Below are positions 54,935-57,905 of a stretch of 64,000 nucleotides of DNA, one piece after another. The translations under genes were made by a program, and so were the position numbers. This stretch comes from Euprymna scolopes (Eukaryota), in NCBI GenBank assembly GCA_053919585.1, contig CM132786.1. One strand, given 5' to 3'. Under the pieces are notes generated by a model, which saw only the letters and a program-made list of their open reading frames with translations, had not been told where the DNA came from and did no database searches. Position 1 is the first letter of the stretch; each line of letters starts with the position of its first letter.

Positions 54935-56082
54935 TCTTCTATATATGTATATATATATAAAAGCGAAAATGTATGTATGTATGTGTGTATGTGTATATGT
55001 TTGTATGTTTGTGTGTCTGCTAAAAACTTTCGAAAGACAGAAAAAAATTCATATACTCGGTATCATATTGAAGCTCCATCCTTCGCCCGAAAATATCGAA
55101 AAATTGGCCAAAAACGTTCATTTTTTCACCCCGAAATCGACAATTTTCGACAGGGGAGGGGGCCAACAAAAACCCTCCTCTCGTGACGACGACCGGTTCT
55201 ACGCATGCGTAAGATGACGTCATGACTTGATTTACTTTAAATAGTTGAAGAACTCACCAAATTTCATATACGTCGTGTTAGCTCAGTTATCTAAACGTTT
55301 TGGGTTCGAATCATGGTGTGAAATGTCTTTTTTTTTTTCGATTTTTTCAATTTAAATATTGAACCAGTGTTATTTAAGACATTTTTCGCGTAACGTTCGT
55401 TTTTCTGTTTTTTTTTTTTTACTTCGCTTATTCTTAACGATACCAAAAAACACCCGGGTACCCACCGATATTTTAAATTTTAATATCGAAACAGGCTTAT
55501 TTAAGCCATTTTTCACGTGTTTTTTTGTTTTTATTTTTCATAAGTTTTAACGTTCGTTTTTCTGTTTAATTTTTGTTTTTGTTTTTTTACATTTAACATC
55601 GTTCGTTTGCCTTACGTTAGGTTTTTTTCGATGTTTTAATTACCCCCCGCTTTATTTTTCAGATAAGTTTTAACGTTCGTTTTTCTGTTTTCTTTTTTTA
55701 CTTCGCTTATAACAAACAAACCTGGTCATTGACCTCATTAAAAATGTTCACGCAGAAAATGTTAACTGCTGAATAGCTATTGCTTACGTCGTCGTCGTCG
55801 TCGTCGTCGTCGTCGTAACGTTCGCACAAAATGTTAACTCTACGATTTCCGTGCGGGCGCCTGTCAATGTTGTTCTTACTTAAATAAATTCAAACATCTT
55901 TCAGTAACTCATTCTGGCTGGACAAACGTTCATGTATTTCACATTTTATTTTCCAACTTCGCCTCAGGGCTTCGGGTTCGATCCTACCAACTTACCAAAA
56001 CTGTTACCCCCCTCCGGTTTCGTTTTTATTTAAGAGCACACACACTTCGAAACACCCGGGCAACTCCGGGTACCCCTGCTAG
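54935..56082 (+). mobile_element. Non-autonomous Helitron-like unit 1 (1148 bp)
   Basis: 5' A|TCTTCTATAT...AAAAGCGAAAATG, (GT/GTAT) tract, 3' hairpin CCCGG-GCAACT-CCGGG (56055-56070), then CTAG (56079-56082). Contains (GTC)n at ~55787-55815. Confidence 0.85.
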
Positions 56083-56962
56083 TCTATATATATATAAAAG
56101 CAAAAATGTGTGTATGTATGTATGTGTGTTTGTGTGTCCGCTAAAAACTTTCGACTGGCGGAACAAAAATTAAGAAACTTGATATCATATTGAAGCTCCA
56201 TCCTTCGCCCGAAAAATATCGAAATATTGGCCAAAAACGTTAATATTTTCACCCTGAAATAAACAATTTTCTACAGGGTGGTCAAAACCGTCCTCTCATT
56301 ACGAGATCGGTTCTACGCATGCATCAGATGACGTCATGCCCTGATTTAATTTAAATAGTTGAAGAGCTGACTAAATTTCATGTGTGTCGTGTTAGCTCAG
56401 TTGGTTAGAGCGTTGGTTCATTATCTAAACGCTGTGAGTTCGAATCGTGGTGAGCGATGTCTTTTTTTTCGATGTTTAAAATTTAAATATTGAAGAACGT
56501 TTTTTAAGCCATTTTTCACGTAACGGTGTTTTTTCTGGGTTTTTTTTTACTTCGCTTATTCTTAGGTTTTCATTAACATCCCACCCCCGACCGACCACAC
56601 ACACCCAAAAACACCGGGTACCCACCGATTTTTTAAATTTTATTATCGAAACAGACTTATTTAAGCCATTTTTCCCGTTTTTTTTTTTTGGTTTGTTTTT
56701 CTGTTTTCTTTTTTGTTTTTTCGATTTTTAAATTTAACATTGTTCGGTTGCCTTTCGTTAGTTTTTTTTGTGTGTTTTATGCTTATGTTTTGATTACCAC
56801 CCACACCCACCGCCTGGGTACGCCTCCCGCGTTCGTTTTTCTGTTTTCCTTTTTTGTTTTTGTTTTACTTCGCTTATTCTTAGGTTTTCATTAACACCCC
56901 ACCCCGCCCGACTACACACACCTCCAAACATTCGGGCAACGCCGGCTACCCCCCCCCGCTAT
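56083..56962 (+). mobile_element. Non-autonomous Helitron-like unit 2 (880 bp)
   Basis: Begins TCTATATA...AAAAGCAAAAATG directly after CTAG and ends CGGGCAACGCCGGCTACC...GCTAT. Confidence 0.85.
56386..56469 (+). pseudogene. tRNA-derived (Met/Ile-like) sequence with A box, B box and oligo-T; also present at ~55273-55338 (internally deleted) and ~57281-57364
   Basis: TAGCTCAGTTGGTTAGAGC (A box/D arm), TTCATTA (CAT at the anticodon position), GAGTTCGAATC (B box), T8 run. The T and acceptor stems pair poorly, so it is not a functional tRNA. Confidence 0.75.
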
Positions 56963-57544
56963 TCTTCTATAAATATAAAAGCGAAAATGGGTGTGTATGT
57001 ATGTACGTATGTGTGTGTGTTTGCGCGTACGCTAAAAACTTTCGTCAGACGGAACATAAATTAAAAAACCTTGGTATCATATTGAAGCTCCACCCTCCGG
57101 CCGACAAATGTCGAAAAATTCGCCAAAAACGTTAATTTTTCACCCTAAAAGCAACAATTTTCCACAGGGGGGTCAGCAAAAACCGTCCTCTCATGACGTG
57201 ATCAGTTCTACGCATGCGTCAGACGACATCATGACCTTGTTGAGTTTAAATATTTGAAGAACTGAATATATTCCATGTTTGTCGTGTTACCTCAGTTTAT
57301 TAGAGCGTTGGTTCATTATCTAAACGTTTTGGGGTTCGAATCGTGGTGTGAAATGTCTTTTTTTCGATATTTTAAATTTAAATATTGAAGCAGGGTTATT
57401 TAAGCCATTTTTCACGTAACGTTGGTTTTTCTGGGTTTTTTTTGCTTTTATTTCATTTATTCTTAGGTTTTCATTAATACCCCCACCCCTGCCCGACCAC
57501 ACACACCGAAAAACACCCTGGCAACGCCGGGTACCCCTCGCTAG
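56963..57544 (+). mobile_element. Non-autonomous Helitron-like unit 3 (582 bp, simplest form)
   Basis: Begins TCTTCTATAAATATAAAAGCG and ends CCCTGGCAACGCCGGG-TACCCCTCG-CTAG|T. Confidence 0.88.
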
Positions 57545-57773: not shown

Positions 57774-57905
57774 NNNNNNNNNNNNNNNNNNNNNNNNNNN
57801 NNNNNNNNNNNNNNNNNNNNNNNNNNNNNNNNNNNNNNNNNNNNNNNNNNNNNNNNNNNNNNNNNNNNNNNNNNNNNNNNNNNNNNNNNNNNNNNNNNNN
57901 NNNNN
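57774..57905. other. Assembly gap (132 N)
   Basis: Run of N. Confidence 1.

What the first reader, a model, noticed from the sequence alone, without database searches (positions are those of the whole stretch)
56300..56470. Each Helitron-like unit carries a tRNA-derived Pol III-like cassette
All three units hold, in fixed order: TTTAAATA about 30 nt upstream, an A box (TAGCTCAGTTGG, best preserved in unit 2), a CAT-anticodon-like loop, a B box (GTTCGAATC in all three) and a T7-T11 run immediately after. The cloverleaf 3' half does not pair, so the product would be a ~75-nt non-tRNA RNA. A rolling-circle DNA element dispersing a self-contained Pol III unit is a SINE/Helitron hybrid. It could spread small RNAs or TFIIIC insulator sites, or transcription might aid its mobilisation. 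Function is purely inference.
Basis: partly seen in the sequence, partly recalled or inferred. Interest (0 to 1): 0.75.

Follow-up and report, generated by a model that had tools for sequence, protein, structure and literature searches.

The report
Helitron family carrying tRNA-derived Pol III-like module
The three repeats are copies of a very abundant rolling-circle transposon (Helitron) family in a large mollusc genome that carries a decayed tRNA-like segment with every sequence signal of an RNA polymerase III gene, but nothing yet shows that it is transcribed or useful.

Summary
All three units (54935-56082, 56083-56962, 56963-57544) carry the same module, and it is a family feature: 26 of 30 copies picked by an unrelated 5' word hold it, and its B-box 20-mer occurs 5,351 times in the 5.9-Gb genome.

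The units are canonical non-autonomous Helitrons. They have 5' TC, a 3' hairpin plus CTAG, A|T insertion sites and frequent CTAG|TC tandem junctions.

The module is tRNA-derived over roughly its first 60 nt (25/28 identical to a native tRNA-Ile at positions 1-28; z 6.7 overall). It is not a tRNA: ARAGORN and Rfam give no hit, and it folds no better than shuffles.

I add one point. A perfect CRE (TGACGTCA) lies about -53/-46 and TTTAAATA about -32/-25 from the inferred start. This is the layout described for 7SL, vault, EBER and 4.5S genes.

Across copies the boxes decay like their flanks. The A box is broken in a younger subfamily. TTTAAATA belongs to a module repeated downstream. Only the B-box block stands out, and only among the most diverged subfamilies.

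Nothing supports RNA-mediated (SINE-like) spread. No RNA data could be obtained.

Best reading: cargo captured at the DNA level. Other first-reader notes report similar modules elsewhere in this genome.

The parts
54935..56082 (+). Helitron copy 1, long variant (about 1.15 kb): 5' TCTTCTATATA... preceded by A, 3' hairpin 56055-56070, ends CTAG at 56079-56082
   Evidence: family ends defined from many copies
56083..56962 (+). Helitron copy 2 (880 bp), starts TC directly after CTAG of copy 1; 3' end degenerate (CTAT), hairpin about 56933-56945
56963..57544 (+). Helitron copy 3, short variant (582 bp); hairpin 57516-57531, ends CTAG 57541-57544, followed by T
56329..56336 (+). CRE/ATF-type palindrome TGACGTCA of unit 2, about -53/-46 if the start lies 11 nt upstream of the A box
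   Evidence: intact in 25/35 unbiased copies; position compared with PMC7279448
56350..56357 (+). TTTAAATA of unit 2, about -32/-25
   Evidence: part of a module repeated at 56482-56489
56386..56461 (+). tRNA-derived segment of unit 2: A box 56393-56404, intact D arm, CAT loop, B box 56436-56446 (GAGTTCGAATC), non-pairing 3' part
56462..56469 (+). T8 run, Pol III terminator-like
   Evidence: T>=4 present in 35/35 copies
55215..55338 (+). Module of unit 1: CRE 55215-55222, TTTAAATA 55236-55243, tRNA-like 55272-55327 with a 20-bp deletion (D loop to anticodon loop), B box 55302-55312, T11 55328-55338
57224..57364 (+). Module of unit 3: mutated CRE CGACATCA 57224-57231, TTTAAATA 57245-57252, tRNA-like 57281-57357 with mutated A box 57288-57299, B box 57332-57342, T7 57358-57364
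55880..55995 (+). Second, more decayed tRNA-like module near the 3' hairpin of unit 1: TTAAATAA, A-box-like remnant, internal T-runs, B box GGGTTCGATCC 55974-55984
   Evidence: 48 instances in the fetched loci, some of them in Helitron bodies that lack the first module

Best explanation
The three units are old, diverged copies of a high-copy non-autonomous canonical Helitron family. An ancestor of the family took up, at the DNA level, a small Pol III-type gene segment derived from a tRNA. The D arm is identical to those of the native tRNA-Ile and tRNA-Thr genes; the donor is unresolved. The family has since spread this segment by rolling-circle transposition, not through an RNA copy.

The module keeps the signals of an extended type-2 Pol III promoter: a CRE near -50, a TATA-like box near -30, an A box near +12, a B box near +56 and a T-run near +81. 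Copies with intact boxes could therefore bind TFIIIC and give a non-tRNA RNA of about 80 nt.

Shown here: the anatomy, the tRNA ancestry, the family-wide presence, the Helitron ends, and background-rate decay in the copies.

Inferred: capture at the DNA level, competence for Pol III, and that the module is cargo rather than a requirement for transposition.
For: Helitron identity:
- 5' TC ends are mostly preceded by A.
- 45 of 46 solitary 3' ends (hairpin plus CTAG) are followed by T.
- 53 of 132 3' ends abut the next 5' end.
- Helitron Rep domains are abundant in the genome, with open frames up to 1,603 aa.

Family feature:
- At least 1,649 candidate matches to the module.
- B-box 20-mer found 5,351 times, on both strands about equally.
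- 26 of 30 copies picked by a 5' 23-mer carry the module.

tRNA ancestry:
- 49 of 78 aligned columns are identical to a native tRNA-Ile(AAT), and 25 of 28 at positions 1-28; z 6.7 against shuffles.

Promoter layout:
- In the consensus, CRE is at 266, TATA at 287, A box at 330, B box at 374 and the T-run at 399.
- This matches the -51/-44 CRE and -31/-24 TATA-like box of 7SL, vault, EBER and 4.5S genes (PMC7279448).
- TGACGTCA occurs only in these modules within the 64-kb window.

Cargo rather than requirement:
- Divergence of the tRNA-like part is 0.090 against 0.095 for the element. Singleton rates are uniform across segments.
- A subfamily with a broken A box and D stem is younger: 9.4% against 15% internal divergence, with only 5 copies in that subfamily.
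- The 3' hairpin 20-mer (20,705 copies) is about four times as frequent as the B-box word.
- 32 of 96 Helitron 3' ends in the fetched loci have no such module upstream.
Against: - No RNA, Pol III or TFIIIC data could be obtained.
- No donor gene outside Helitrons was found, so capture is inferred. The upstream part, including TTTAAATA, looks like a diverged copy of the element's own internal module (score 15.5 against 9.1 +/- 1.6 for shuffles). The unit may therefore have been assembled inside the element rather than captured whole.
- Among six copies of the most diverged subfamilies, the B-box block is the best conserved 30-nt window of the whole element: 7% against 19%, ranks 1-2 of 495 overlapping windows. 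In 35 unbiased copies it has no shared variants. This hints at constraint on source copies and argues against pure cargo.
- A second tRNA-like module sits near the 3' hairpin of related families. That would be odd for a single accidental capture.
Confidence: 0.6

Rival explanations
1. The module is a working part of the element or of the host genome. Source copies are kept under selection to recruit TFIIIC and Pol III. This would either help the Helitron (open chromatin or single-stranded DNA at the donor site, protection from silencing) or seed thousands of TFIIIC sites and small RNAs.
For: - Complete extended type-2 layout, including a perfect CRE at the expected distance.
- The B-box block is the best conserved 30-nt window among the most diverged subfamilies, level with the hairpin-like region.
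- B box and TTTAAATA have no shared variants in 35 unbiased copies. Only 1.9% of 11-nt windows and 6.8% of 8-nt windows show this.
- The CRE keeps its palindrome when it changes (CGACGTCG in 3 copies).
- A second tRNA-like module sits near the 3' hairpin in other bodies. Several unchecked first-reader notes describe the same theme.
Against: - The A box and D arm are among the more variable parts (70th and 95th percentile). A younger subfamily has lost them.
- Only 6 of 35 copies keep both boxes.
- The low variability of TTTAAATA is shared by its downstream twin, which precedes no tRNA-like segment and is the least variable 11-mer of the element.
- The CRE is average for shared variants.
- Rank 1 among roughly 17 independent 30-nt windows is weak statistics, and it rests on six copies pre-selected for an intact A box.
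- There is no expression evidence.
Confidence: 0.25
2. The module is a tRNA-derived SINE, or a tRNA retro-pseudogene, that inserted into an ancestral Helitron and has been carried along since.
For: tRNA-derived heads that no longer fold as a cloverleaf are typical of SINEs. tRNA-derived SINEs are common in molluscs (own knowledge; PMC11481361 appeared in the list but was not read). An imperfect direct repeat of about 18 matching bases (GATTT, TTTAAATA, TTGAA) flanks the module.
Against: - The T-run follows directly after about 76 nt, so there is no SINE body or LINE-type tail.
- About 28 nt separate the upstream repeat from tRNA position 1, which a Pol III transcript would not contain.
- The flanking repeat belongs to a module that recurs further downstream.
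- No free-standing copies were seen among 30 sampled genome hits.
- A CRE near -50 is absent from SINE flanks according to PMC7279448.
Confidence: 0.07
3. CRE plus TATA is a captured Pol II promoter fragment, and the tRNA-like stretch downstream is an unrelated relic. The Pol III-like layout would then be coincidental.
For: CRE and a TATA box 13 nt apart make a plausible minimal Pol II promoter. Helitrons are known to capture promoters (own knowledge of bat Helitrons). TTTAAATA is common in this DNA.
Against: The CRE, the TATA box, both internal boxes and the terminator all fall at the distances tabulated for extended type-2 Pol III genes. The chance of TGACGTCA landing within a few bases of the expected place is of the order of 1e-4, given 0.46 expected per 64 kb.
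Confidence: 0.05

Closest known systems
Non-autonomous canonical Helitrons with captured host sequence (gene-fragment capture in maize, bats and others)
   Same: 5' TC, 3' hairpin plus CTAG, insertion between A and T without duplication, head-to-tail arrays, internal cargo of host origin, high copy number.
   Different: The cargo is a small Pol III-type unit derived from a tRNA, not a fragment of a protein-coding gene. [quoted passage not shown] Here the Helitron structure is clear and the family has thousands of copies.
Extended type-2 Pol III genes: 7SL, vault RNA, EBER1/2, 4.5SH, 4.5SI (PMC7279448)
   Same: Internal A and B boxes, a TATA-like box near -31/-24, an ATF/CRE site near -51/-44 (vault -53/-46), and a T-run terminator. 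4.5SI is also said there to trace, less certainly, to a tRNA-derived SINE (B2).
   Different: Those are single or few host or viral genes with proven transcripts. Here the unit sits inside a DNA transposon in thousands of decaying copies, and no RNA has been shown. TTTAAATA is a true TATA-type sequence, whereas the mammalian boxes are only TATA-like.
tRNA-derived SINEs
   Same: A tRNA-related head with A and B boxes that no longer folds as a cloverleaf; very high copy number.
   Different: No body, no tail, no target-site duplications. The terminator lies directly after the head. Spread is by Helitron ends rather than by LINE-mediated retroposition.
Dispersed tRNA genes and B-box-only (ETC) TFIIIC sites
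   Same: The B box matches GGTTCGANNC and is the better conserved of the two boxes. Such sites can bind TFIIIC without producing much RNA (own knowledge).
   Different: TFIIIC binding was not tested. The acceptor and T stems are missing, so this is not a tRNA gene.

Membership tests
Canonical Helitron (non-autonomous) | 5' end TC and 3' end CTRR | tested here: met
   5' TC(T)TCTATATA... and 3' ...GCTAG in the window units and in dozens of copies. Unit 2 has CTAT.
Canonical Helitron (non-autonomous) | GC-rich hairpin about 10-20 nt upstream of the 3' end | tested here: met
   CCCGGG-CAAC-GCCGGG followed by TACCCC..GCTAG. The exact 20-mer occurs 20,705 times in the genome.
Canonical Helitron (non-autonomous) | Insertion between A and T without target-site duplication | tested here: met
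   45 of 46 solitary 3' ends are followed by T. Solitary 5' ends are mostly preceded by A. No flanking repeats were seen. Empty sites were not examined.
Canonical Helitron (non-autonomous) | An autonomous RepHel partner with the same termini | tested here: inconclusive
   PF14214 gives at least 6,421 candidates, many in open frames of 1,486-1,603 aa.
tRNA gene | Cloverleaf recognised by tRNA models | tested here: not met
   ARAGORN finds none in the window or in about 110 module copies. Rfam RF00005 gives no hit at E<=10, while the native tRNA-Ile scores 64.3 bits. The acceptor and T stems do not pair.
Type-2 Pol III promoter unit | A box TRGCNNAGTGG-like, B box GGTTCGANNC, 30-60 nt apart, T>=4 terminator | tested here: met
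   Met in the family consensus and in unit 2. Among 35 unbiased copies: A box 13, B box 21, both 6, T-run 35.
Type-2 Pol III promoter unit | Transcript made by Pol III; TFIIIC and TFIIIB occupancy | not testable with these tools
Extended type-2 promoter (7SL / vault / EBER / 4.5S type) | ATF/CRE site near -50 and TATA-like box near -30 | tested here: met
   TGACGTCA lies 64 nt and TTTAAATA 43 nt upstream of the A box. With box A at +12 these are -53/-46 and -32/-25, against the table in PMC7279448. This is a sequence and position match only. The TATA motif is also part of a repeated internal module.
SINE | Pol III head plus body and LINE-type or A-rich tail, flanked by target-site duplications, dispersed on its own | tested here: not met
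   The terminator follows the head directly. All copies lie inside Helitron ends. 29 of 30 sampled genome hits of the A-box word were in this Helitron family and 1 was a true tRNA-Ile.

The most novel reading that the evidence does not exclude
A Helitron lineage in this mollusc maintains complete Pol III gene-like units (CRE, TATA, A box, B box, terminator) as part of its own biology. Recruitment of TFIIIC and Pol III through the B-box block would be selected in source copies. It would either promote rolling-circle transposition or escape from silencing, or spread thousands of TFIIIC-bound boundary sites and a small non-tRNA RNA of about 80 nt through the genome.
Probability: 0.15. Interest if true: 0.75.

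Novelty: new variant of a known kind. Interest (0 to 1): 0.45.

Why it matters
Helitrons are known for picking up pieces of protein-coding genes and promoters. A clear, high-copy case whose cargo is a small Pol III-type gene unit seems barely documented: the one paper I found (PMC10701932) treats such a case as a possible first and could not confirm it.

If the module is active, one DNA transposon family would have placed thousands of potential TFIIIC and Pol III sites across a 5.9-Gb genome. That bears on how Pol III sites, insulators and small RNAs spread. It would also give a testable link between Pol III transcription and rolling-circle transposition.

If it is inert cargo, it still matters for annotation. 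These copies will confuse tRNA, SINE and Pol III promoter scans in this genome.

Tried and rejected
1. Functional tRNA: rejected (ARAGORN, Rfam and fold z-scores).

2. Chance resemblance to a tRNA: rejected (23-nt exact run and z 6.7 against a native tRNA-Ile).

3. TTTAAATA as a general upstream element of native tRNA-Ile genes at -35: only the one gene already in hand has it. A looser search found TAAATA at -24 in a 242-bp-period tRNA-Ile array. This amounts to at most two independent observations, so I did not use it as support.

4. Excess conservation of the A and B boxes across copies: not found. An apparent excess in my first sample was selection bias, because those loci had been ranked by similarity to the module.

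5. The 4,080 exact genome hits of the A-box 20-mer are not a copy number for the module. Most lie in one-orientation arrays: a tRNA-Thr-like array on C11 and a tRNA-Ile array on C22.

6. Donor tRNA. The anticodon arm matches neither native Ile nor Thr. The donor remains unresolved.

I did not try fetch from genomes afterwards.

9. Literature searches for Helitrons with Pol III or tRNA cargo gave only the Arabidopsis tRNA-Cys paper.

Full report
**Setting.** The window is part of contig C4 of a 5.9-Gb assembly with 925 contigs. Earlier follow-up notes of this scan call it a large mollusc genome; I did not identify the species. The region 54935-57544 holds three head-to-tail units that align at 83% mean column identity. 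An assembly gap follows at 57774-57905. I left it alone.

**The observation.** Each unit holds the same features in the same order:
- TTTAAATA at 55236, 56350 and 57245.
- A tRNA-like stretch at 55272-55327, 56386-56461 and 57281-57357.
- GTTCGAATC at 55304, 56438 and 57334. Three matches against 0.34 expected; 1 of 100 shuffles reaches three.
- A T-run of 11, 8 and 7 bases.

The exact A box TAGCTCAGTTGG is found only in unit 2. Unit 3 has three changes in it. Unit 1 has a 20-bp deletion that removes the rest of the D arm and the CAT loop.

None of the three is a tRNA. ARAGORN finds nothing. The Rfam tRNA model gives no match even at E<=10, while a native tRNA-Ile in a fetched locus scores 64.3 bits. 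The predicted RNAs fold no better than shuffles, with z from +0.2 to +0.75.

**What the units are.** The module has at least 1,649 candidate matches in the genome, and copies cover the whole unit of about 880 bp. I fetched 90 loci and read the ends of many copies.
- The 5' end is TC(T)TCTATATATAAAAGCG followed by a (TGTA/TG)n microsatellite. In solitary copies it is mostly preceded by A.
- The 3' end is a hairpin, CCCGGG-CAAC-GCCGGG, then TACCCC..GCTAG. It is followed by T in 45 of 46 solitary copies.
- 53 of 132 3' ends run straight into another 5' end, giving the CTAG|TC junctions seen in the window.

These are the defining features of canonical Helitrons. The genome also holds at least 6,421 candidate Helitron Rep domains, many in open frames of about 1,500-1,600 aa.

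The three window units are structural variants. Unit 3 stops at the first terminus. Unit 2 reads through a degenerate internal terminus to a second one. Unit 1 carries a further 3' block.

**The module is a family feature.** I picked 30 copies by an exact 23-mer in the 5' body, about 190 bp upstream of the module. Of these, 26 carry the module, three are truncated or interrupted, and one has an internal deletion. The B-box 20-mer occurs 5,351 times, equally on both strands.

The A-box 20-mer gave 4,080 hits with a strong strand bias. That bias comes from two one-orientation arrays of tRNA-type units on other chromosomes, so the figure is not a copy number for the module. Of the first 30 places of that word, 29 were this module in this Helitron family and one was a real tRNA-Ile(AAT). 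I saw no free-standing copy of the module.

**tRNA ancestry.** The family consensus of the module aligns colinearly with the native tRNA-Ile(AAT).
- 25 of 28 positions are identical at positions 1-28, including a 23-nt exact run over the D arm.
- 49 of 78 aligned columns are identical in all, with one 1-nt gap before the T loop. The z-score is 6.7 against shuffles.
- Beyond the T loop there is no similarity, and neither the T stem nor the acceptor stem can form.

The same D arm occurs in native tRNA-Thr genes. The anticodon arm matches neither Ile nor Thr, so the donor tRNA is unresolved.

**A fuller promoter layout.** Upstream of TTTAAATA lies a perfect CRE/ATF palindrome, TGACGTCA. Within the 64-kb window it occurs only in units 1 and 2, against 0.46 expected. 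It is intact in 25 of 35 unbiased copies although it contains a CpG.

In the consensus the CRE starts 64 nt and TTTAAATA 43 nt upstream of the A box, the B box 44 nt downstream of it, and the T-run 69 nt downstream. If box A sits at about +12, as stated for type-2 promoters in PMC7279448, the positions are:

| Element | Inferred position |
|---|---|
| CRE | -53/-46 |
| TATA | -32/-25 |
| B box | about +56 |
| Terminator | about +81 |

That paper tabulates a TATA-like box at about -31/-24 and an ATF/CRE site at about -51/-44 (vault RNA -53/-46) for 7SL, vault, EBER, 4.5SH and 4.5SI genes. It also states that tRNA genes and SINE copies lack such sites. So the module looks less like a bare tRNA gene or a SINE head and more like a small non-coding RNA gene of that class. 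This is a match of sequence and position only.

**Cautions on the upstream part.** TTTAAATA is common here: 18 in the window against 16 expected. Each unit has a second copy just after the T-run.

The whole stretch from GATTT through TTTAAATA to ..ACGT aligns with the element's own repeated internal module. The score is 15.5 against 9.1 +/- 1.6 for shuffles, with a largest shuffle score of 17. The TATA motif may therefore belong to the Helitron's repeat structure rather than to a captured gene.

Only one of the native tRNA-Ile genes has TTTAAATA near -35. A tandem tRNA-Ile array has TAAATA at -24. This is too little to call it a rule in this species.

**Do the boxes decay at the background rate?** My first sample was ranked by similarity to the module and was therefore biased. 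I then used 35 copies chosen without regard to the module: 19 picked by the 5' word, 13 secondary copies in the loci, and the three window units.

| Segment | Divergence from majority base | Share of same-size windows that are no more variable |
|---|---|---|
| Whole element | 0.095 | - |
| tRNA-like part | 0.090 | 0.50 |
| A box | 0.105 | 0.70 |
| Rest of D arm | 0.166 | 0.95 |
| B box | 0.049 | 0.08 |
| TTTAAATA | 0.018 | 0.01 |

Further points from these copies:
- Singleton rates are the same everywhere, 0.02-0.03, as expected for neutral decay after insertion.
- The least variable 11-mers of the whole element are the second TTTAAATA-TTGAA copy, downstream of the T-run. The low variability of the upstream motif is therefore not a Pol III signal.
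- The CRE is average.
- 13 of 35 copies keep an A-box consensus, 21 keep a B box, 6 keep both, and all 35 keep a T-run of four or more.
- A subfamily with TAGGTCAGTTGATTAGCGCG, whose A box and D stem are broken, has lower internal divergence outside the module than the intact group: 9.4% against 15%, with only 5 copies in that subfamily. Amplification therefore seems to have gone on without a good A box.

One signal points the other way. Six copies of the most diverged subfamilies differ from the main consensus by 19% on average. In them the best conserved 30-nt window of the whole element is the B-box block, at 7% (ranks 1-2 of 495 overlapping windows). It is level with the hairpin-like region, which has a known role in Helitrons. 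These copies had been selected for an intact A-box word. There are only about 17 independent windows, so this is suggestive only. The B box and TTTAAATA also lack any variant shared by three or more of the 35 copies. Only 1.9% of 11-nt windows and 6.8% of 8-nt windows show this.

**Wider context in this genome.** The exact 3' hairpin 20-mer occurs 20,705 times, about four times as often as the B-box word. In the first 42 Mb of C1 there are 100 termini against 23 B-box words. In my loci, 32 of 96 3' ends have no such module between the nearest 5' end and the terminus. The same termini therefore move other bodies without this module.

Several of those bodies, and the long variant in the window (unit 1, about 55880-55995), carry a second, more decayed tRNA-like module roughly 70-190 nt upstream of the 3' hairpin. 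It comprises TTAAATAA, an A-box-like TGGCC.AATGG, internal T-runs and a perfect B box GGTTCGATCC. I found 48 instances in my loci, all in the sense of the element.

Earlier notes of this scan describe similar modules in other windows, and one intact tRNA-Arg inside a Helitron-like unit. I used these notes as leads. Only the second module was checked here.

**Reading.** The best-supported account has three parts.
1. An ancestor of this non-autonomous Helitron family acquired a small tRNA-derived Pol III-type unit at the DNA level.
2. The family spread it by rolling-circle transposition.
3. The copies decay at the background rate.

The module is competent by sequence in a minority of copies and could give a non-tRNA RNA of about 80 nt. 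No data show that it does.

The 'SINE/Helitron hybrid' label is not supported, because nothing indicates an RNA intermediate. A maintained function in source copies cannot be excluded and has some support (B-box block, CRE placement, recurrence of tRNA-like modules). I give it about one chance in four.

**What is known.** Helitron capture of gene fragments is well known. For non-coding RNA genes I found only the Arabidopsis tRNA-Cys cluster paper. It says such a case would be the first and could not confirm Helitron structure with prediction tools (PMC10701932). My other literature searches found nothing closer. I therefore rate this as a new variant of a known kind, of moderate interest.

RNA runs could not be searched. 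No further genome DNA could be fetched, and I did not try another tool for it.

Noticed in passing
G000 contig C11, about 1,677,900-1,691,700 and onward to about 2.16 Mb (not in the window): A one-orientation tandem array with a 144-bp period of units that share the tRNA D-arm 21-mer. The few units with an intact T arm read as tRNA-Thr (AGT or TGT anticodon loop). There are at least 2,479 reverse-strand hits of the word genome-wide, most of the listed ones in this array. It looks like a tRNA-derived satellite or a giant tRNA gene array.
   Followed up: partly
G000 contig C22, about 3.66-3.71 Mb (not in the window): A tandem array with a 242-bp period of tRNA-Ile(AAT)-type genes, all on one strand. 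At least 832 units have TAAATAAAG starting at -24 relative to the tRNA start.
   Followed up: partly
window 55880-55995; 48 instances in loci L006-L088: A second, decayed tRNA-like module (TTAAATAA, A-box-like TGGCC.AATGG, internal T-runs, B box GGTTCGATCC) roughly 70-190 nt upstream of the Helitron 3' hairpin. It is shared by Helitron bodies that are otherwise unrelated to the family in the window.
   Followed up: partly
window 56560-56625 and 55440-55465; family consensus positions about 500-545: An internal pseudo-terminus. A copy of the 3' terminal region lies inside the longer variants, with half of the hairpin deleted in some subfamilies and complete in others. It is followed by two or three repeats of an internal module that starts CGATTTTTTAAATTT. 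The long variants look like read-through or stacked units.
   Followed up: partly
family consensus position 266-273 (window 55215-55222, 56329-56336, 57224-57231): When the CRE palindrome TGACGTCA changes in diverged subfamilies, it often changes at both outer positions together, to CGACGTCG (3 of 92 copies), which keeps the palindrome. CGACGTCA occurs in 5 copies. A second palindrome, ACGCATGCGT, lies 4 nt upstream.
   Followed up: no
whole genome G000: The CpG-rich 3' hairpin 20-mer is intact 20,705 times. Helitron Rep domains give at least 6,421 candidates, many with open frames of about 1,500-1,600 aa and no stops. This is a very large Helitron population, and some of it may be recently active.
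   Followed up: no
window 54962-55015, 56107-56138, 56988-57025: Every copy has a (TGTA/TG)n microsatellite of variable length directly after the first 24 nt or so of the 5' end. Rfam miRNA models (mir-297 and others) give spurious weak hits on it.
   Followed up: no
window 57774-57905: An assembly gap or masked stretch of 132 N lies 230 bp after the end of unit 3. It was not filled or looked up.
   Followed up: no
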